Shown piece by piece: positions 196 through 10,440 of a DNA stretch of 64,000 nucleotides. The notes beneath the pieces are model-generated. The model saw only the letters and a list, made by a program, of their open reading frames with translations, had not been told where the DNA came from and made no database searches. Position numbers and translations under genes: made by a program. This DNA is from Haliotis rubra (Eukaryota): assembly GCF_003918875.1 (NCBI RefSeq), contig NW_025767371.1:372001-436000 (forward strand). The letters are read 5' to 3'. Within the stretch, counting starts at the first letter, position 1. Every line of letters starts with the position of its first letter.

Positions 196-268
196 TGATA
201 TAAAACTTCTGTTGAGTGCTGAAAATATCCTCTGTTGAGGATCTCGACCCATTACTTGTGTCCGTCAT
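196..268 (-). CDS. Possible first coding exon of a divergently transcribed gene running off the window
   Basis: ATG at 268 gives MTDTSNGSRSSTEDIFSTQQKFYI, followed by a consensus donor CA|GTAAGT at 195-190. Head-to-head with the gene at 881. No homology recognised. Confidence 0.3.
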
Positions 269-880: not shown

Positions 881-3800
881 ATGATGGATAACGAAGAAGT
901 TCCACCCTTATCACCTGTAAAGCAAGTCGTGCGTAAAACTCTACTAATTGGTAAGTTAGTCACTATAGCAACTAGGGGAAGTAGAAGTAATTCACAGGTA
1001 ATAATATTGAAATTATTGCATGCTTAAATAGTTTTAAATGTCCAAGAGTTGATGCTGATGTTTTGGAAATTCCTGATTATTATATCCTGTAATATTTGTA
1101 CAACGTGTCAAGACATGTTGTTGTTAGCACGAATATTGTTCGTTAACCTTTATGGAACACCTTCACGCGCATGATCAATGCTGTTTACCGATTTTAAGAA
1201 CATTAAGGAAATAATAAAGAATTTAGTTTAGTCTGCCCTAAAGACATCCTCGCGACATAGTCAATGAGTGAGATTTTGTGCTTCTAGGAGCAAAATACCT
1301 GCCCTGTCCGAATGGGACGCCAGTGAGGGGCTGCCCATTTTTTACACACTTCCTGGTGGAATTCTAAATTAACATGACCCATTGTAATTCTAGTTAACAG
1401 CTAGTTAAATGTTACCTCACTATAAATAGCTAGGATTATTAAAGCCTACCTCATACAGTTATTATTGAATTTGGCTTATGTTTACACTGGAGAAGTTTGT
1501 TGCCCTAATTCAATATTATCATGTTACTACCATATTGGCATTAGCATCACATATTGGTATTATTAAATCTTGCTTACTTGAGACAGTAAGTTTTACCTGG
1601 AACTCAAAGAACATACCAGAGAGGGGCACACTGATTCTTGGAAACTTTAATCACCTGATATTTCACAGTGAAGTCAAGGTTAGAATTGCTCCCTACTACC
1701 TATGCTATTCAGACAGCTGCCAACTGATGACTTGGTTGTGAGTGTGTCATCATGACCTGACAGGAATCGTTGCTCATCCTGTCAACCACTGGTTTATCCG
1801 GTTCATGGCTTGTGGCTGACATCATGCTGGAATATTGGTGATTGTGTGGTGAATTAGAAGATGAATAAACCTCTAATGTACTTCACATTAACACAAGTCA
1901 TATGGACTTATATTTCATGTTGAGACCCATGAAGATCATTAGATCATTAGATTGGTATTCAACAACCTATGCTTGCTGAAAGAGGCGATTAACTGGATAG
2001 GATGGTCACTGGCTCGGTTGACACATGTCATTGTATCCTATTTGCATAGAGCGAAGCTCATGATAATAATTTGCGGCGCTTTTAATCAGATCTGATTCTT
2101 ATTACCCGGAAAACCCAAGCTGCCTGTTAGGCTAGAAGGTTATAGTCACATGACTTTATCCAACCGGGTACCCATTTTCTGCTGGGTGAACAGAGGCAAT
2201 TTGAACAAACTCACTTGCCTAAGGTGAGACCACATGTATCACATGTGCTTCATTGTGGGGCAGGACTAAAGTCCTAGAAACTCTCAGGAGTCAAGGTGCC
2301 AAACACGGTCATTATCCAAGGATTGTCTGAGCTCGACGTTGCTTAACTTCAACTGATTCGTGACCTGAGCTCTGTGCCCACAATCTGTGATGATAATTAC
2401 AGGATTGTCAGGTCCAGACTTGATAATTTACAGACTGCTGCCATATAGCTGGAATATTGCTGTATGACAACAATCAAACCAAACCAACCTTTTTTTGTAG
2501 AGAACATCGGTGTGGCAACAACAGTTGATGATCTGACTCGGTGTTTCGCCCCGGCCCTACAGAAGTGTGGTAAGGACCGCCCCCCAATACAGCTGGCTGT
2601 TGACAGGAAGGGGAGGTCCCTGGGGTATGCTACTGTCACTGTGCCCCTCAGCACGGTCGAGCTTTTCCTGGACTTCAATGACAGGTGAGTGACGACATTG
2701 GTGACATTGTTTCATGACTGAGTGAACAGGTCAGTAAGGGATTGAGTGGATAGGTCAGCAGGTGAGTGAGTCAGTGGGTGTGGCATGAGGGCATGATGGG
2801 TGTTATGAGGGGTAGGGCAGTGGGTGGTTGATTCAGATAGGTCAGTGGGTGAGCAGGGGTTGATGGGTGTTATCAGGGGGTAATCACAGTGGATGGTTGA
2901 TTCAGTAGGTCAGTGGGTGAGTGAGGGGTCTGATGGGTGTTATGAGGGGGTAGGGCAGTGGGTGGTTGATTCAGTAGGTCAGTGGGTGAGTGAAAGGTTG
3001 ATGGGTGTTATGAGGGGGTAGGGCAGTGGATGGTTGATTCAGTAGGTCAGTGGGTGTATGAGGGGGTTGATGGGTGTTATGAGGGGGTGGGTTAGTGTGT
3101 GGTTAATTCAGTAGGTCAGTGGGTGAGTGAGGGGGTTGATGGGTGTTGATGAGGGTAGGTCAGTGGATGGTTGAGTCAGTGGGTCAGTGTGTGGTTAGTC
3201 CAGTAGGTCAGTGGGTGAGTGAGGGGTTGATGGGTGGTGAGATGAGGGCAGTGGAGTAGTTGAGTTAGGAGGTCAGTGGGTGAGTGAGGGGGTTGAAGGG
3301 TGAGTGAGAGGAGGTAAGTGAGTGGGTGGTTAAGTCAGTGGGTGAGTGAGAGGTAGGTAGTGGATGGGTGGGTGGTGAGATGTTGGTGAATGAGTGGTAG
3401 GGCAGTGAGTAGTTGAGTCAGGTCAGTGGGTGAGTGAGAGGGTTGATAGGTGTTATGAGAGGGTAGGTCAGTGGATGGTTGAGTCAGTAGGTGAGTGGGT
3501 GAGTGAGAGAGGGTTGATGGGTGTTATGAGGGGGTAGGTCAGTGGGTGAGTGAGGGGGTAGGTGAGTGGGGGTTAAGTCAGTGGGTGAGTGAGGGGTAGG
3601 GCAGTGGGTGCATGGGTAGGTCAGTGGTAAGTGAGAGGTTGGTGAATGAGTGGTAGTCAGCAGTGAGTAGTGAGTCAGTAGGTCAGTGGGTGAGTGAGGG
3701 GTTGTAGGGTTAGTGAGAATGCATGGAAAGGGTTGATGAGAGTCTGAATGAGTAAGTCAGCAAGTGATTAAGGGCTGGAATCATGAATGGCTTGCTTGCA

Positions 3801-6800
3801 GCCTGCGTTGCCTCTGCCGTTTCATACAATAAACAATCCAAGTTATGAAATACACAATGCCATTTAGAAAATGTTCAAATGTAACATGTCAAATTTGTGA
3901 ATAAACTTTTTCAGTAAAGTACAGATTCTAGTATTTTGTTGGGATGGGTCTCATCCGGAATTCGAATCCACAACCTCAGAGTCAGACACCTAATAGCCAG
4001 CACACAATTCAGATGTCTAAGCCAGTCCGCCACAAAAGTCAGACAACTGGTAGTCTATCCAACTAAATAGTGATATTGTTACTAAGCCCCAGTCTGATTG
4101 AAAGAAAATGCTACCATCACATTTGAGGTGCCTGTGTTGCCAAACTTGTTTCAAGTAAAAAGCAACATTTCATCATTTACCAAGACTTCTATTAACATTC
4201 GCAGCAATATTACATAGGGGAGAGGGTAGCAAGTGTTATAAAACTACAGATCCCTATGTTCTAGGTACATCAACAATGACAAGATCAGAGTGACACTGGG
4301 AGACAAGCGTGTTGGCACTTGGCAGTCCGTAGGGAATGGGGTGTTCATGTCCTCAAAAGCCAGGAGGTCGACTGTGGACACCGTCACCTGCAACACCATG
4401 CTCAATCATGGCCTCATCGATGGTGGAATGTATCTCACACACAAGAAGGTCAAGGTGCCCGATCATGTCGTAGCAGCGGCTCTCACAGATGGTACGCTGA
4501 GACTAGTGTCATCATTCATATCTGGAACGTCTTGAAGACTCCTGTTGGCATGTATTGTTTAAAAATTAAACAACTGACAATCGGTTTTACAAGTCATGGT
4601 TCCAGGAAATATGTTTGTGTTCCAGGATATATATACTGAGGGAAACAAATACAGGAACACTACTTCATGGCAGTGTTTCGTTATTTATTCTCAAATGTCC
4701 TCCCTCAGCGCTATTCAAATCTGGTTATGAAAACTGGAAAATATTAAAGGAACTCTTAAATTTTCCTGGGTTCCTTTATTTGTTTCTCTCAGTATATATA
4801 CTGTACTGTTCACTATGGTCAGTATCCACCTGAAGAAGGGGCAAGAACTAGTTGTTGTTATCCATAAGATTTGTCTTGTATTCACTACACCAACTTCTAA
4901 ATGCCTTTAGAGTGGTGGGGTAGCCTAGTGGTTAAAGTGTTTGCTTGTCATGCCGAAGACCCGGGTTCAATTCCCCACATGGATACAATGTGTGAAACCC
5001 ATTTCTTGTGTTCCCCCGCTGTGATATTGCTGCAATATTGCTAAAAGCGGGGTAAAACTTTACTCACCCCACTCTAAATGCCTGTGAATAATTTCCATGA
5101 TGTTGGTGAGGAAAGTATGAGTTCTACTGCCTTGTAGACAGGGTCATGAAGGTATTTCCTTAGACATGCATTTAACTTACAATCGTGGGTTTGAATCCTT
5201 TTCAGGTCTGTCTGCTCGGACATGGCCTTTACTACCTCAGGCTATCCTCACACTTTAAGAATAAATGTCACAATATTTAATAAATAAATTGCTGTTGAAA
5301 GCTACATTTAGGCAAATTCACAGAAGCTCTATCTCGGTGATTCTAGGCAAAGCCATTTTGTTTTAGTTGTTTGTTTAAACGATACACTCAATATTGTGCC
5401 AGCTACATGATTTGTAATCATTCAAGTTTGGACCTGACATCCGGTGATCATGAGCATTTATCTACACAGTTGGGATATAATGATATACATCAACCACTCA
5501 GTAAGCTTGATCACCTGATCCTGTTAGTCACCTCTTACTGCAAGCACCAGGGTTGCTGAATATCAGTTCTAACCCAGACCCTCATCAGTCTTGTAGGTAG
5601 TATGTTCATACACTGGCCATATTCTTGACAGGTACAGAGAAGCTGGTGTCCTTAGGAAAGTCTGTCTTTCACAGCCAGGAGGCCCTAAAGCTCACCCGAC
5701 TATTTTCTGGGACAGTCTATTGTACAACAGGTAGGTCATGTCAGTCAGGGAACAGTCTACTGTACAAGAGGCGAAGTCTTACCCAGGAACAGTCTGATAT
5801 TACAAAAGACAGCCTGGCATTACTTGCTGTGGTCCTCACAATACTGCTGACAAATCAAATGTCATATGATGATTGAACCTGTACAGCGTTACCAAAATAT
5901 TGGAGGATTCTTGTACATCATGCCTGTAGAATATTGTATCATTGAACTGCTTCCGTGGTGAGACCGTCGGCCGGAATTGTCCCGTTAAAATATGGTATGC
6001 TTCATGTACTTGTTGGTCCCTGCCTGGCGTTCGGGATTAATGGGTACAACAAGGACTGGTCGGCTCGGAGTCAGTATAATGTGTCTGATTGGGGTATTCA
6101 TGCTTAACTGCGGCATGGTATCTCAGTGGGCTAGCACTATAAAACCAGCTTAAGTCTGGTCTAGTAGAAACAGCCACACATACACACGCATACATGTCAT
6201 ATGAATGAAATATTCGTAAGTGCGGCGTTTATACCTCATGTCACCTCACCTATTGTATCATTGAGTAGCTTCAATGTAAAATAATGCTAGGTATTGAAAT
6301 ATATACAGTGGTCAGAGAACGGAGTTATCCACATGCCTTCCCTGGTGTTGTAGGTGTCAGCCCACAGAATGCTGTGTTCTGGACAGATGAAACCTCACAC
6401 CAACTAGAGGAGGTTGCCAAGAGCCCAGGCTGTGTCGCCATTGGCCCGTGTGGGTATGACCTGAGTACGGACAAGATGGTCGACACAGCTGTTCAACAGC
6501 TGCAGGCGTTTGAAGCACAGGTAACAACCGGGAGGTTTGGTCAGGTTGACGTTGCTTGAAGATCACGTGGTGGCAATTGTGTGACGTATCTATGTGAAAC
6601 TGTCACACCGTGATAGCGTTGGTTGTTGCTTACACTGTCTAGCACTGTTTTTCCTCACTGTCTCAGAATAGATCACTGTGTCATGGTAGAAAAAATACTG
6701 GCTGCACTTTTTCAATTTCACATTCCTACTTACTTCTTGACAGATGTTCAGTGAATGTCTGCAAGAACTCTTTGTTCTTTGTAAAATGCAAACTATATTT

Positions 6801-9096
6801 CAGTATTACTAGCTATATACCGGTAGTTAATGTTTTAACTGATGGGCTGTCTGGCTGTGTGGCAAGAGTTGCTTCCCTTGTTTCAAGTTGGAAATGCCAC
6901 TAACCTTGTGAAAGGTGGCCCCACTATTGCACTGACAGCATGAGGTGAACTCCCCTGATCTTGTATCTCCAGCCACATTGACCTTCACAGTGGGTGTACT
7001 GGCTTGTTGTGGGCCACTCATGTTGCTTTGCATCTGTTACAATGTTACCTGTTGACAGCAGCTGTTTCACCCACAAATACACCAGATTGATCATCAGATA
7101 GTATAAATGCCTCCTATTTATATATCTTGGTTGATCAGGAGCCATTTTTAAAGTGTTTAATTATGAAATAAGTGCAAATTAACCGGATAATCATGCATTA
7201 TTCGGACAAACATATGTGTGAAGCTTATTTCCTTATTATTTGTAAGTTTTCAGACCTTATATGTTGCTCTCGTCATGTCTACTTGTCAAATTAAACACTA
7301 GACATAGTTCTTGAAATACAAAATGAAAGATGACAACAATGCTGGCATCCCTCGCTATAACCCGGGTCTTGAGGTCCATGAATGAACCTCCCCGTTATGA
7401 GACACCTGCGTATTAAACACGGAATAAAGACCAAGTAATATGATATTTTCCACGAGGACTGCAAAACTGCTATTTAGTACGTAAGTAGGACTTAAAGTGA
7501 CAGAACGTTCCTATGTTTAGCATCAATGGACTCTGTGCGTGCGTGTGTATGTGGGTGTGTGCGTGTGTGCAAGTGTGTACCAAGTGTTATACTGACTTTA
7601 TCTGTCCCCAGATTCAGCTGGCTATCCGTCTTAACATGCCCCTCGTTGTGTGTGAGACCATGGCCAAATCGGAGGTGATGTCGCTCCTCACATCATACAA
7701 GGACAAGCTGCCACGGGTTGCAATCCTCACGAAACCAGCCAGCTTAGATGTGATCACAGACTATTTGGATCATGGGTTTTACTTCTTTGTACATGGTTAG
7801 TTCTTGATTTGTCTGTCTACTGAACATCTGAATGGCTCATCAGAGTTTAAAATTCTCCATAAAATCTACAAGTCTAGATTCAGTGAAATAGAAACAAACA
7901 GGACACCACCGAGGCCATGGCATGTGGACTCGTGGGAGACTCTGTTACATTAATGCTAATTGTTCTTTGAATATGTGTAAACGTTGGTCTTAATGGTGGT
8001 GAGAAATTAAGACCTCAATTCAATTGTCCACAGGAAACAGTTATAATCAGTTACCAATGTGTAAGCTATAAAGCCTCTGTGGCAGACAGATTAGTGATGT
8101 CATTTGATTGTGATGTCATAGTTAAAGTGATATCTCATAGGAGATTGTGCCATCTCAGCCATCTGATGTCGGTGGTTGATAAGTTGATAAACATTACACA
8201 TAGAATACACATTGTATGAAGTTTGCAATCTTGTAGGTCACTTGTGGCTGCCCGGGTCAAGCAGCCCTGTCTGGATTTGGCTCAAGAACTGTACCCCAGA
8301 ACAGCTGACTAGAGTGGTGGTGTCCAGCCAGATGCCAACGTCAGGATGCCCGACCAGGATGTCCGTCCTGTGTGACATCATCATTCAAGCACTGGAGAAA
8401 GATGAGGGTGATGTGAGGGGAATCCTCAGGGACAACACTGTCAGGTTTTATGGTCTATCTGACAGGGAGACTGATGGTGTTACTGAGGATGGAGGTAGCA
8501 ATGTTGTTGCTGCTGAAGTTGGATCACATGGAGAGGAAGAGGGTGGTATAAGTATTGACAGTAGCCTTGTTCATCCAACTGTGAGCTGTGAAGTAGCAGA
8601 GAGTGACAGTGTCCAAGTGTCAGCTGATGTCAAGGTTGTACCTGCTGATGATGAGTGTGAATGTCTAGGTGATGTTCACTCCACTTCATCACTTGTTGGG
8701 GAGGAAGATCGAAGTGTAGAGGACAGATATTCTGACCATGAAACAGGACATCTTGTGTCTGATGAAGCAGACGTCAGTTCTTCAAAAGTCAGAACAAAGG
8801 CACAACATGATGAGGGACAAGCAGACGTCAGTTCTTCAAAAGTCGGAACAAAGGCTCAACATGATGAGGGACAAGCAGACGTCAGTTCTTCAAAAGTCAG
8901 AACAAAGGCACAACATGATGAGGGACAAACAGATGTCAGTTGTTCCAGTGTTGGATCAAACATTAGTGTGCCAGAAGTCTGTAGCCAGAAAGATAGAGAT
9001 GGAACTGTGAATGTTGAAACTAATTGGACCTACAGGATTCTGTTGTGGTTGGCTTTCATCAGTGGACTAACAGCAATGTATTTCTATGGCAACTGA
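881..9096 (+). CDS. 7-exon gene: RRM + catalytically degenerate TatD-like domain + acidic repeat linker + C-terminal transmembrane anchor (596 aa)
   Basis: Exons 881-950, 2501-2684, 4265-4491, 5632-5730, 6354-6520, 7612-7795, 8237-9096. All introns are GT-AG with matching phases; total 1791 nt. RRM: RNP2-like TLLIENI..TTVDDLTRCF, RNP1-like RSLGYATV, then FNDRYINNDKIRV. TatD-like blocks: LIDGGMYLT, TGVSP, VAIGPCGYD, QLQAFEAQIQLAIRLNMPLVV, DKLPRVAI, DNTVRFYGL. Ends ILLWLAFISGLTAMYFYGN. AATAAA at 9186-9191. Confidence 0.9.
2065..2395 (-). mobile_element. 5S rRNA-derived SINE nested in a family B element
   Basis: Minus strand contains 5S-like GAAGTTAAGCAACGTCGAGCTCAGACAATCCTTGGATAATGACC, then a CORE/Deu-like segment (CCTTAGGCAAGTG...CACCCAGCAGAAAATGGGTACC); TSD atgataat. 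Confidence 0.6.
2740..3720. repeat. G/T-rich degenerate minisatellite (about 60-bp period) in intron 2 of the RRM-TatD gene
   Basis: Recurrent taggtcagtgggtgagtgagggggttgatgggtgttatgagg. Confidence 0.9.
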
Positions 9097-9354
9097 GCAT
9101 GGCTTGTCTTATTCCAATGCTGGTTCCAGCAAGGGTAGGGGGTTCTGTGGCTGGTTCTTGGTGTCAGGTTGACACAAAACTGTACAATAAACCTATGTAT
9201 TTGTTGTGTTTATAAACTTGATAAAATTTAATAAATCTAAATTCATATATATTTATGTTTGAGTGGCATCTAGGGAATAGTGATTGTGGTTATGCATTTC
9301 CTGCGGGTAAATTCAACCTATAGTAAAGGACATGGGACCTATTGGGACAAACAT

Positions 9355-10440
9355 GAGTGAGGAAGGAAGGATGGGTTGGTGGATGTGTTGTTGGTTGGGT
9401 GAGTGAGGTAGAGGAAGGAAGGGGGGTTAGTGGATGGGTTGTTGGTTGGGTGAGTGAGGTAGAGGAAGGAAGGGGGGGTTAGTGGATGGGTTGTTGGTTG
9501 GGTGAGTGAGAGGTAGAGGAAGGAGGGGGGTTAGTGGATGGGTTGTTGGTTGGGTGAGTGAGGTAGAGGAAGGAGGGGGTTAGTGGAAGGGGGTTGTTGG
9601 ATGGGTGAGGTAGAGGTTGGAAGGGGAGTGAGTGGATGGGTTGTTGGTTGGGTGAGGAGTTAGAGTGAAGGAGGGGGTTGGTGGAATGGGTTGTTGGTTG
9701 GGTGAGTGAGGTAGAGGAAGGAGGGGGGGTTGGTGAATGGGTTGTTGGTTGGGTGAGTGAGGTAGAGAAAGGAAGGGGGATTGGTAGATGGGTTGTTGGT
9801 TGGGTGAGTGAGTGAGAGGGATGTGTGGTGGCTTGGTGGATGGGTTGTTGGTTGGGCGAGTGAGTGAGAGGGATGTATGGTGGGTTGGTGGATGGGTTGT
9901 TGGTTGGGTGAGTGAGGTAGAGGCAGGAAGGGTTGGTTGGTGGATGGGTTGATGGTTGGGTGAGTGAGGTAGAGGAAGGAAGGGGGTTGGTGGATGGGTT
10001 GTTGGTTGGGTGAGTGAGGTGAGGTGAGGTGAAATTGGGTTTTATGTCGTGCTTGAGAATATTTTGCTCATATGTGTGTATGTGTATGTGCGGCTGCTTG
10101 TACTAGCCCAGACTTAAGCTGGTTTTATAGTGCTAGCCCACTGAGATACCATGCCACAGTGAAGCATGAATACCCCACTCAGACACATTATACTGACTCC
10201 GAGCCGACCAGTCCTTGTTGTACCCATTATTCCCGAGCGCCAGGCAGGGACCAACAAGTACCATATTTTAACGTCTTTTGGTATGAAGCGTTCGTGAATC
10301 GAACCCGCGACCTTCCGCTCTCCCGGCGGACGCTCTAACCACTACACCATGGAGGCGGTCTGGGTGAGTGAGGTAGAGAAAGGAAGGGTGGGTTGGGTTG
10401 TTGGTTGGGTGAGTGAGAAGGATATGTGGTGTGTTGGTGG
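9355..10440. repeat. G-rich minisatellite (about 45-bp period) interrupted by a family C SINE
   Basis: Recurrent gtggatgggttgttggttgggtgagtgaggtagaggaaggagggg. Confidence 0.9.

What the first reader, a model, noticed from the sequence alone, without database searches (positions are those of the whole stretch)
881..9096. Membrane-anchored RRM-pseudoTatD fusion: a candidate tethered RNA-binding pseudonuclease
Seen: seven phase-consistent exons encode RRM, TatD fold, an acidic linker of about 190 aa and a single hydrophobic helix at the extreme C-terminus. Established: TatD proteins are typically soluble metal-dependent nucleases using GxHP, GExGLD, HxR, HC and ETDxP motifs (E. coli H62, E91, H127, H152, E201, D203). 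Here every one is replaced (GVSP, GPCGYD, VVCET, AILTK, SSQMP), yet the ORF and splice sites are intact. Inference: a dead nuclease scaffold repurposed to bind RNA or nucleic acid at an organelle surface, conceptually like membrane-tethered small-RNA or immune factors. I do not recognise this architecture from any characterised protein.
Basis: partly seen in the sequence, partly recalled or inferred. Interest (0 to 1): 0.85.

Follow-up and report, generated by a model that had tools for sequence, protein, structure and literature searches.

The report
Abalone RRM–dead TatD tail-anchored protein
This is a real, expressed and selectively conserved abalone gene whose protein joins a divergent RNA-recognition-type domain to a TatD nuclease barrel that has lost all its metal-binding residues and ends in a short membrane anchor; the combination has not been described, and its function is still unknown.

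Summary
Seven GT-AG exons (881-9096, +) give a 596-aa protein identical to RefSeq XP_046547511.1, an "uncharacterized protein" of Haliotis rubra. Intron-less contigs from two runs join exons 3 to 7 at the model's junctions. Exon 3 alone encodes the last RRM strand and the first TatD strand, so the fusion is not a model artefact.

- **TatD barrel:** Pfam E=4e-23; the fold matches E. coli TatD at TM 0.85.
- **Metal ligands:** all five are replaced (N7Y, E91P, H127C, H152L, D203Q), as are H62S and E201S. The replacements are conserved in three abalone species.
- **N-terminal domain:** Pfam misses it, but a family profile hits only RRMs and the model has an RRM fold (Z 8-9). Only one of three RNP aromatic positions survives.
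- **Tail:** 17 moderately hydrophobic residues followed by two more.
- **Selection:** dN/dS is 0.22-0.27 overall, 0.12 in the RRM and 0.05 in the tail.
- **Linker:** the acidic linker is dispensable and almost absent in H. rufescens.

New here: divergent paralogues ("B", 22-30% identical) with the same architecture and intron phases sit head-to-head, and keep H62 and E91. An earlier scan note (s1-325298) had flagged these upstream copies.

The most likely role is a non-catalytic, membrane-tethered binding module. RNA binding and localisation are untested.

The parts
881..950 (+). Exon 1: start codon and residues 1-23; RNP2-like strand begins (TLLIENI)
   Evidence: Model; identical to RefSeq isoform X1; donor TTG|gtaagt
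2501..2684 (+). Exon 2: core of the RRM-like domain (residues 24-84), including the RNP1-like LGYATVTV
   Evidence: the family profile aligns it to RRMs of PABP and nucleolin; AF2 gives beta-alpha-beta-beta-alpha
4265..4491 (+). Exon 3: last RRM strand (YINNDKIRV), conserved beta-hairpin/helix extension, and first TatD strand (LIDGGMYL, with Y141 at 4431-4433 replacing Asn7). The fusion lies inside this one exon
   Evidence: RNA contigs cover 4266-4492 and splice on to exon 4
5632..5730 (+). Exon 4: TatD strands/helices 2-3 (residues 161-193); 99 nt, the same size and phases as in paralogue B
6354..6520 (+). Exon 5: GVSP (S196 at 6359-6361, for His62) and GPCGYD (P225 at 6446-6448, for Glu91)
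   Evidence: Pfam TatD_DNase on this exon alone E=5e-5; alignments; RNA contigs
7612..7795 (+). Exon 6: VVCET (C263 at 7651-7653, for His127) and AILTK (L288 at 7726-7728, for His152); KDKLP motif shared with E. coli TatD
8237..8460 (+). Exon 7, first part: last TatD strands and helices, SSQMP (S340 at 8323-8325 for Glu201; Q342 at 8329-8331 for Asp203); the loop that carries RNEP in TatD/TATDN1 and in paralogue B is deleted
   Evidence: AF2 strand 337-340 and helices 352-382
8461..9015 (+). Exon 7, middle: acidic Ser/Val/Asp/Glu-rich linker (residues 386-570, net charge -27) with a 54-nt x 3.4 repeat at 8765-8945
   Evidence: dN/dS about 0.46; nearly absent in H. rufescens
9016..9096 (+). Exon 7, end: conserved tail NVETNWTYR-ILLWLAFISGLTAMYFY-GN (hydrophobic core residues 578-594 = 9037-9087) and stop codon at 9094-9096
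   Evidence: Kyte-Doolittle 1.76-1.91 over 17 aa, the highest in the protein; dN/dS 0.04-0.07
196..268 (-). First exon of the head-to-head paralogue B (MTDTSNGSRSSTEDIFSTQQKFYI, donor gtaagt)
   Evidence: tblastn with the H. asinina B protein; sequence; same arrangement in L001 and L002
269..880 (.). 612-bp region between the two divergent start codons; presumed shared bidirectional promoter (inferred, not tested)
   Evidence: the spacing is conserved, with the B start about 580 bp upstream in H. rufescens and 294 bp in H. asinina measured to the annotated A start

Best explanation
LOC124257487 of Haliotis rubra encodes a cytosol-facing protein. From the N-terminus it has a divergent RRM with a conserved beta-hairpin/helix extension, a complete class-I TatD (beta/alpha)8 barrel in which all five metal ligands are substituted, a variable acidic spacer, and a short, highly conserved C-terminal hydrophobic anchor.

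Shown:
- The gene model and the splicing of exons 3 to 7.
- Both folds.
- The ligand losses and their conservation across species.
- Purifying selection on the RRM, the barrel and the tail.
- Head-to-head paralogues with the same architecture.

Inferred:
- The barrel cannot perform two-metal phosphodiester hydrolysis and is kept as a binding scaffold (a pseudonuclease).
- The tail inserts post-translationally into an internal membrane, so that RRM plus barrel act as a tethered binding module for single-stranded nucleic-acid ends or for a protein partner.
- It probably works together with the co-located B paralogue.
For: **Gene model.** It equals the RefSeq protein. Intron-less contigs from two runs join exons 3-7, while DNA runs keep the introns.

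**TatD barrel.** Pfam gives E=4e-23. The AF2 model has eight strand-helix units, with pLDDT about 86-97 through most of the barrel. It matches E. coli TatD 1xwy at TM 0.85, rmsd 2.9.

**Ligand map**: N7 to Y141, E91 to P225, H127 to C263, H152 to L288, D203 to Q342, and also H62 to S196 and E201 to S340. These are the residues that bind the two metals in human TATDN1 (Glu112, His149, His174, Asp222, Asn12; PMC10085689). The replacements are the same in H. rubra, H. asinina and H. rufescens, except P225Q.

**RRM.** The family profile hits only RRM chains in the PDB. The Foldseek top 50 are all RRMs. VIA gives Z 8.1-8.9 over 75-81 residues.

**Selection.** dN/dS is 0.22-0.27 overall, 0.11-0.14 in the RRM, 0.21-0.35 in the barrel and 0.04-0.07 in the tail.

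**Tail.** It is the most hydrophobic stretch of the protein. There is no N-terminal hydrophobic signal. Paralogue B has an unambiguous transmembrane segment at the same place (Kyte-Doolittle 2.2-2.8).
Against: - No binding, localisation or activity data exist.
- The RRM keeps only one (Y66) of the three canonical RNP aromatic positions, and Pfam RRM_1 fails. Such RRMs often bind proteins rather than RNA.
- The tail is short and scores only 1.37-1.50 in a 19-residue Kyte-Doolittle window, below the usual 1.6 cut-off.
- His127 is replaced by a Cys that is invariant in all eight family members and could still bind a metal.
- I could not inspect model coordinates, so shifted ligands are not excluded.
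- The exon 1-2-3 junctions rest on the RefSeq model and on contig length, not on laid reads.
Confidence: 0.55

Rival explanations
1. Regulatory partner of an enzyme. Copy A is the dead subunit of a pair and works by binding the co-expressed paralogue B, which keeps His62, Glu91 and Asp/Glu203 and may retain some nuclease activity. This would resemble CPSF100 with CPSF73. The degenerate RRMs would serve as protein-protein modules, and both tails would place the pair in the same membrane.
For: - Head-to-head A and B genes lie about 300-600 bp apart in three species.
- They share architecture and intron phases.
- B keeps part of the active site and is itself constrained (dN/dS 0.28).
- The RNP motifs are degenerate in both (alignment).
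Against: - B also lacks His127, His152, Glu201 and Asn7, so it may be inactive too.
- No evidence of co-expression or interaction was obtained.
- To my knowledge (not checked here), E. coli TatD acts as a monomer.
- The A and B tails differ strongly in hydrophobicity and could target different membranes.
Confidence: 0.2
2. Remodelled enzyme. The barrel is still catalytic, with a new site built around the family-invariant Cys263, Tyr141, Asp137 and neighbouring acidic residues. It would use a chemistry other than two-metal phosphodiester hydrolysis; the amidohydrolase superfamily is chemically versatile.
For: - Cys263 and Tyr141 replace ligands and are invariant in both clades.
- The barrel is constrained at dN/dS 0.21-0.35.
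- The fold is complete.
Against: - Five of five metal ligands are lost in A, and the RNEP loop is deleted.
- There is no precedent that I know of for a Cys-based TatD.
- Position 225 varies (Pro/Gln) among the three species.
Confidence: 0.13
3. Artefact or decaying gene: a mis-joined gene model, or a pseudogene on its way out.
For: Loss of all catalytic residues; variable repeat-rich linker; only computational annotation.
Against: - Spliced contigs from two runs match the model.
- The RRM end and the TatD start lie in one exon.
- The open frame is intact in three species with dN/dS 0.22-0.27, and the tail is near 0.05.
- Independent RefSeq/GenBank models in three species agree.
Confidence: 0.02

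Closest known systems
Class I TatD nucleases (E. coli TatD; animal TATDN1)
   Same: - Homologous (beta/alpha)8 barrel: Pfam PF01026 E=4e-23.
- 33% identity to E. coli TatD over 178 aa; TM 0.85 to 1xwy.
- The first-strand motif is of class I type (G-x-N position) rather than the HxH of class II (PMC10085689).
   Different: - All metal ligands are replaced: N7Y, E91P, H127C, H152L, D203Q.
- H62S and E201S are also replaced, and the RNEP loop is deleted.
- It carries an N-terminal RRM, an acidic linker and a C-terminal anchor, none of which occur in TatD or TATDN1.
- It is not filed as a functional TatD nuclease.
Haliotis paralogues 'B' (P0010-P0014, annotated "3'-5' ssDNA/RNA exonuclease TatD-like")
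   Same: - Same RRM-like, TatD and C-terminal transmembrane architecture.
- Same seven-exon structure and intron phases.
- Adjacent and divergently transcribed.
- Shared N7Y, H127C and loss of H152 and E201.
   Different: - Only 22-30% identical.
- B keeps His62, Glu91, Asp/Glu203 and the RNEP loop.
- B has a short linker and a much more hydrophobic anchor.
Pseudonuclease RNA-binding proteins (fungal Ssd1 of the RNase II family, PMC8097288 and PMC8934651; Drosophila Exuperantia)
   Same: A nuclease fold that has lost its catalytic residues but is kept under selection and re-used as a binding protein. This is the way I propose copy A works.
   Different: Unrelated folds, no membrane anchor and no RRM fusion. 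RNA binding is demonstrated for Ssd1 and not for this protein.
Membrane-anchored RNA enzymes and RNA anchors (PNLDC1 trimmer with a C-terminal TM; PARN with an RRM; tail-anchored SYNJ2BP, PMC8370977)
   Same: An RNA-handling module held on the cytosolic face of an organelle by a single terminal helix. PARN combines a 3'-exonuclease fold with an RRM. The PNLDC1 and PARN facts are from my own knowledge; SYNJ2BP is from the paper's abstract.
   Different: No homology. Those nucleases are active, and localisation and RNA binding are untested here.
Active/inactive nuclease paralogue pairs (CPSF73/CPSF100, INTS11/INTS9; PMC7980224)
   Same: A dead paralogue is retained next to a less degenerate one. 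This is a possible model for the A/B pair.
   Different: Metallo-beta-lactamase fold. Heterodimerisation is proven there and only conjectured here, and B itself lacks several ligands.

Membership tests
TatD_DNase (PF01026) | Sequence match to the family profile above the curated threshold | tested here: met
   82.5 bits against a cut-off of 27, E=4e-23, residues 137-312 to profile positions 2-177 of 253
TatD_DNase (PF01026) | (beta/alpha)8 TIM-barrel fold of TatD type | tested here: met
   AF2 model with eight strand-helix units; 1xwy TM 0.85, rmsd 2.9; all top 15 PDB hits are TatD proteins; Atlas TatD clusters at TM 0.77-0.88
TatD_DNase, class I (TatD/TATDN1) | (G/A)xN motif on strand 1, whose Asn binds metal A (PMC10085689) | tested here: not met
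   G-M-Y in A and G-A-Y in B; Tyr141 is invariant in the family
TatD_DNase (functional nuclease) | Metal ligands Glu91, His127, His152 and Asp203 (E. coli numbering; Glu112, His149, His174 and Asp222 in TATDN1) | tested here: not met
   Pro225, Cys263, Leu288 and Gln342; conserved in three species except P225Q
TatD_DNase (functional nuclease) | Mg/Mn-dependent 3'-5' exonuclease or AP-endonuclease activity | not testable with these tools
   Needs a recombinant protein assay
RRM (RNA recognition motif) | Match to Pfam RRM_1 | tested here: not met
   No hit at E<=1 for the full protein or for residues 1-135, nor at E<=10 for any of seven family members
RRM (RNA recognition motif) | Profile-level homology to known RRMs | tested here: met
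   The profile of alignment A3 gives 31 PDB hits, all RRM proteins: PABP 1.7e-9, nucleolin 2.8e-9, single-RRM chains 0.002-0.1
RRM (RNA recognition motif) | beta1-alpha1-beta2-beta3-alpha2-beta4 fold | tested here: met
   AF2 elements E18-24, H32-45, E53-57, E63-72, H73-80, E91-96; Foldseek top 50 all RRMs; Z 8.1-8.9, rmsd 2.1-2.7 over 75-81 aa
RRM (RNA recognition motif) | Aromatic residues at RNP2 position 2 and RNP1 positions 3 and 5 | tested here: not met
   By the alignment: RNP2 L-L-I-E-N-I (Leu at position 2) and RNP1 L-G-Y-A-T-V-T-V (Tyr66 at position 3, Thr at position 5), so one of three is kept. B keeps only the RNP2 Tyr
RRM (RNA recognition motif) | Binds single-stranded RNA or DNA | not testable with these tools
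   Needs EMSA or CLIP
Tail-anchored membrane proteins | Single hydrophobic segment within about 30 residues of the C-terminus, no signal peptide and no other TM | tested here: inconclusive
   The only strongly hydrophobic stretch is 578-594, with two residues after it: Kyte-Doolittle 1.76-1.91 over 17 aa but 1.37-1.50 over 19 aa. The N-terminus is hydrophilic. No dedicated TM predictor was available
Tail-anchored membrane proteins | Post-translational insertion, cytosolic orientation | not testable with these tools
   Needs localisation and carbonate extraction
Pseudoenzyme (pseudonuclease) | Catalytic residues lost while the fold and purifying selection are kept | tested here: met
   Ligand map; barrel dN/dS 0.21-0.35; fold. 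Absence of activity was not tested

The most novel reading that the evidence does not exclude
The A/B pair is a membrane-bound RNA 3'-end handling module peculiar to abalone. B would be a residual TatD-type 3'-5' exonuclease on the cytosolic face of an organelle. A would be its catalytically dead RNA-holding or gating partner, with both driven from one bidirectional promoter. This would be a convergent counterpart of the PARN/PNLDC1 trimmer system, built from a TatD barrel. A further open point is that the barrel scores closer to bacterial TatD than to human TATDN1, so a bacterial origin is not excluded.
Probability: 0.1. Interest if true: 0.8.

Novelty: new variant of a known kind. Interest (0 to 1): 0.5.

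Why it matters
TatD/TATDN nucleases are ancient, soluble repair and degradation enzymes. I found no description of a TatD barrel that has lost every metal ligand yet stays under selection, nor of one fused to an RRM and a membrane anchor.

If the protein is a tethered binder, or the dead partner of paralogue B, it would:
- add the TatD fold to the short list of nuclease folds recycled as pseudonucleases;
- give a natural A/B series (B keeps two of five ligands, A none) for asking how a TIM-barrel nuclease is converted into a binding scaffold.

It is also a lineage-restricted gene family in a farmed mollusc with no assigned function. The practical value is modest until binding, location and expression are measured.

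Tried and rejected
- **Brute-force exon enumeration** timed out twice. I replaced it with phase-guided junction lists.
- **Pfam on single exons** gave only weak TatD hits and no RRM.
It returned only the gene's own cluster plus two low-complexity hits. It gave me a usable protein id but said nothing about distant relatives.
- **Word-indexed searches** with the whole protein and with the TatD part found only Haliotis proteins and one bacterial TatD. The B paralogues appeared only after I added their exon translations to the query alignment. "Haliotis-only" is therefore a detection-limited statement.
- **Origin of the barrel (animal TATDN1 or bacterial TatD) is unresolved.**
  - PDB sequence scores favour E. 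coli TatD: 72 bits against 18 for A and 33 for B with human TATDN1.
  - Atlas features put an arthropod TATDN1 cluster first, tied with bacterial clusters.
  - The C-terminal insert of B hit nothing meaningful in the PDB.
  - The genome-contig scan used Haliotis-specific patterns and returned two irrelevant loci.
  - The five bacterial TatDs retrieved are all class II, so the tree could not test origin.
- **Read laying.** I avoided the intron-2 minisatellite, so the exon 2-3 junction was not observed directly.
- **Literature searches** for the architecture found nothing relevant.


Full report
**1. What is in the sequence**

Three-frame reading and phase-guided choice of splice sites give seven + strand exons: 881-950, 2501-2684, 4265-4491, 5632-5730, 6354-6520, 7612-7795 and 8237-9096. 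Every intron is GT-AG. The phases are 1, 2, 1, 1, 0, 1 and the sum is 1791 nt = 596 aa.

An exhaustive HMMER search with exon 7 returned a 578-aa protein that matches it 100%. Cluster look-up names it LOC124257487 of Haliotis rubra (blacklip abalone), "uncharacterized protein". My model is letter-for-letter its 596-aa isoform X1, XP_046547511.1. Isoforms X2 to X4 each lack one 18-aa unit of the linker repeat, in three different registers. That looks more like repeat copy-number variation than splicing.

**2. Is it expressed as modelled?**

I laid four public runs on 3700-9300. Two of them, from one study and guessed to be RNA, each hold a contig (1569 and 1649 nt) whose pieces are 4266-4492, 5634-5728, 6352-6517, 7609-7794 and 8236-8790 (to 8821 in the second). 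The pieces are contiguous in the contig, so these are exons 3 to 7 with the introns removed. Two DNA-type runs of the same organism keep the intron sequence.

The contigs run on 339 and 388 nt beyond the 5' end of exon 3, enough for exon 2 (184 nt), exon 1 (70 nt coding) and a 5'UTR. I did not include exon 2 in the laid stretch because of the minisatellite in intron 2, so junctions 1-2 and 2-3 rest on that length and on the RefSeq model.

The fusion does not depend on a junction in any case. Exon 3 alone encodes the last RRM strand (YINNDKIRV) and the first TatD strand (LIDGGMYL).

**3. The TatD barrel and its lost ligands**

- The full protein matches Pfam TatD_DNase at E=4e-23, above threshold.
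- Its best solved relative by sequence is E. coli TatD: 72 bits, and 33% identity over 178 aa by BLASTP.
- An AlphaFold2 model of residues 1-400, built on 13 sequences, has eight strand-helix units and pLDDT of about 86-97 through most of the barrel.
- The model superposes on E. coli TatD 1xwy at TM 0.85, rmsd 2.9 Å. The next hits are all TatD-family structures.

According to the TATDN1-dAMP-Zn structure paper (PMC10085689), the two metals are held by Glu112, His149, His174, Asp222 and Asn12 of the class I (G/A)xN motif. These correspond to E. coli Glu91, His127, His152, Asp203 and Asn7.

| E. coli position | Clade A (this gene) | Clade B |
|---|---|---|
| Asn7 | Tyr141 | Tyr |
| His62 | Ser196 | His |
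| Glu91 | Pro225 (Gln in H. rufescens) | Glu |
| His127 | Cys263 | Cys |
| His152 | Leu288 | Ser |
| Glu201 | Ser340 | Ala |
| Asp203 | Gln342 | Glu or Asp |

The one qualification is that His127 became a cysteine, and that cysteine is invariant in the whole family.

**4. The N-terminal domain**

Pfam RRM_1 does not match the protein or any of its relatives. A profile of seven family members, however, retrieves only RRM proteins from the PDB. PABP scores 1.7e-9, nucleolin 2.8e-9, and single-RRM chains score 0.002 to 0.1.

The AF2 model has the beta-alpha-beta-beta-alpha-beta order. All top 50 Foldseek hits are RRMs. Re-alignment gives Z 8.1-8.9 at rmsd 2.1-2.7 Å over 75-81 residues, nearly the whole of each target domain. 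So it is an RRM by descent and by fold.

By the alignment, RNP2 is L-L-I-E-N-I and RNP1 is L-G-Y-A-T-V-T-V. Only Tyr66 remains of the three canonical stacking aromatic positions. Canonical RNA binding is therefore uncertain. To my knowledge, degenerate RRMs often bind proteins instead.

A beta-hairpin plus helix (residues 99-129) follows the RRM. Its Trp104 and Gly110-Val-Phe112 are invariant in the family.

**5. Linker and tail**

Residues 386-570 are Ser/Val/Asp/Glu-rich with net charge -27. They contain a 54-nt repeat and evolve fastest (dN/dS about 0.46). H. rufescens has only about 25 residues in their place. The linker is thus a dispensable spacer.

The last 26 residues are almost identical in three species (dN/dS 0.04-0.07). 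Their core, ILLWLAFISGLTAMYFY, is the most hydrophobic stretch of the protein. It scores Kyte-Doolittle 1.76-1.91 over 17 residues but only 1.37-1.50 over 19, and two residues follow it. The N-terminus is hydrophilic.

This fits a tail anchor of moderate hydrophobicity. I could not run a dedicated predictor and cannot say which membrane it targets.

**6. Relatives and selection**

Orthologues were found in H. asinina (623 aa, 79-83% identity depending on the alignment) and H. rufescens (434 aa). Their loci show a second TatD gene on the opposite strand immediately upstream.

I rebuilt the H. asinina copy (490 aa, seven exons, same phases). It proved identical to the deposited protein P0010. 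Adding its exon translations to the query brought in the whole B clade:
- two proteins in H. asinina;
- two in H. rubra;
- one cluster from H. cracherodii.

B has the same RRM-like, TatD and C-terminal TM architecture, with a far more hydrophobic anchor (Kyte-Doolittle 2.2-2.8). It is 22-30% identical to A.

A and B are each monophyletic on long stems. The split is therefore much older than the abalone species sampled, and relatives outside Haliotis may have been missed. The first exon of the H. rubra B gene lies in this window at 268-196 on the minus strand, 612 bp from the A start codon.

Nei-Gojobori dN/dS among the three A orthologues:

| Region | dN/dS |
|---|---|
| Whole protein | 0.22-0.27 |
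| RRM | 0.11-0.14 |
| TatD barrel | 0.21-0.35 |
| Tail | 0.04-0.07 |

B gives 0.28 over exons 2-5. Neither gene is decaying.

**7. How it most likely works**

With no metal ligand left, copy A cannot use the two-metal mechanism of TatD enzymes. That follows from the ligand map and PMC10085689, but it is an inference, not an assay. The barrel, RRM and tail are all constrained, so the protein does something.

The reading I favour (confidence 0.55) is a non-catalytic binding module held on the cytosolic face of an internal membrane. Nuclease folds are re-used as RNA binders in a similar way in Ssd1 (PMC8097288, PMC8934651).

- The main rival (0.2) is that A is the dead partner of the co-located, less degenerate B, as in CPSF100 with CPSF73.
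- A remodelled Cys-based active site cannot be excluded (0.13).
- An artefact or pseudogene is contradicted by sections 2 and 6 (0.02).

**8. What it is not, and what stays open**

It is a member of the TatD family by sequence and fold. It fails the family's catalytic definition, so I do not file it as a nuclease.

Whether the barrel descends from animal TATDN1 or from a bacterial TatD is unresolved. PDB scores favour E. coli TatD. Protein-language features put an arthropod TATDN1 cluster first, tied with bacterial clusters. B has a long insert before RNEP; from memory TATDN1 has a comparable one, which I did not verify here, and the insert hit nothing in the PDB. I could not fetch mollusc TATDN1 for a tree.

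No paper in the library describes this architecture. No Atlas cluster covers both domains.

**9. Verdict**

This is a new variant of a known kind: a lineage-restricted, membrane-tailed RRM-pseudoTatD family. It is interesting as a clean natural case of nuclease-to-scaffold conversion with a graded paralogue series, but there are no functional data.

Noticed in passing
window 2786-3692 (intron 2) and 9359-10024 (260 nt after the stop): Two G-rich minisatellites with strong GC skew (up to 0.86-0.98). Units are 69/137/92/71 nt in the first and 52 nt x 13 in the second, and both are full of GGTGAGT donor-like words. The first starts about 30 nt after the exon-2 donor. Earlier scan notes describe similar splice-site-derived satellites in the paralogous introns upstream.
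   Followed up: partly
window 8765-8945: A coding 54-nt repeat x 3.4 (18-aa unit DVSSSKV[R/G]TKAQHDEGQA). RefSeq isoforms X2-X4 each drop one unit in a different register, and the RNA contigs break inside it. H. asinina has more units and H. rufescens has none. This is probably copy-number variation rather than alternative splicing.
   Followed up: partly
window 4822-5195 and 5944-6317 (introns 3 and 4); related copy at about 10072-10338: Very high-copy interspersed repeats. Summed contig depth reaches 10^5-10^6 in the DNA runs and thousands in the RNA-like runs. The ORF fragment PAWRSG(L/I)MGTTRTGRLGVSIMCL recurs in opposite orientation downstream of the gene.
   Followed up: no
window 196-268 (-) and 269-880: First exon of the divergently transcribed paralogue B, and a 612-bp inter-ATG region. 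GC is 0.40 and CpG is at expectation, so it is not a CpG island. The head-to-head arrangement is conserved in H. asinina and H. rufescens.
   Followed up: partly
window 3913-4721, 6177-6565, 8096-8794: All four public runs differ from the window by about 2-5% at the same positions, in introns and exons alike. No 100%-identical contig appears. The runs therefore come from a divergent haplotype, population or very close species rather than from a second paralogue.
   Followed up: no
L001 10001-10370 (H. asinina copy A): The deposited H. asinina model starts with an extra 24-nt upstream coding exon (MRRFFDLS...) that is absent from the H. rubra and H. rufescens models. It is either an alternative start or an annotation difference.
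   Followed up: no
P0004/P0010 against PDB: Both abalone clades score much closer to bacterial TatD (E. coli 72 bits; structure-based identity 25% for A) than to human TATDN1 (18 bits for A and 33 for B; 16-17% identity for A). They also share the KDKLP motif with E. coli TatD. Either TATDN1 sits on a long branch or the barrel has a bacterial origin.
   Followed up: partly
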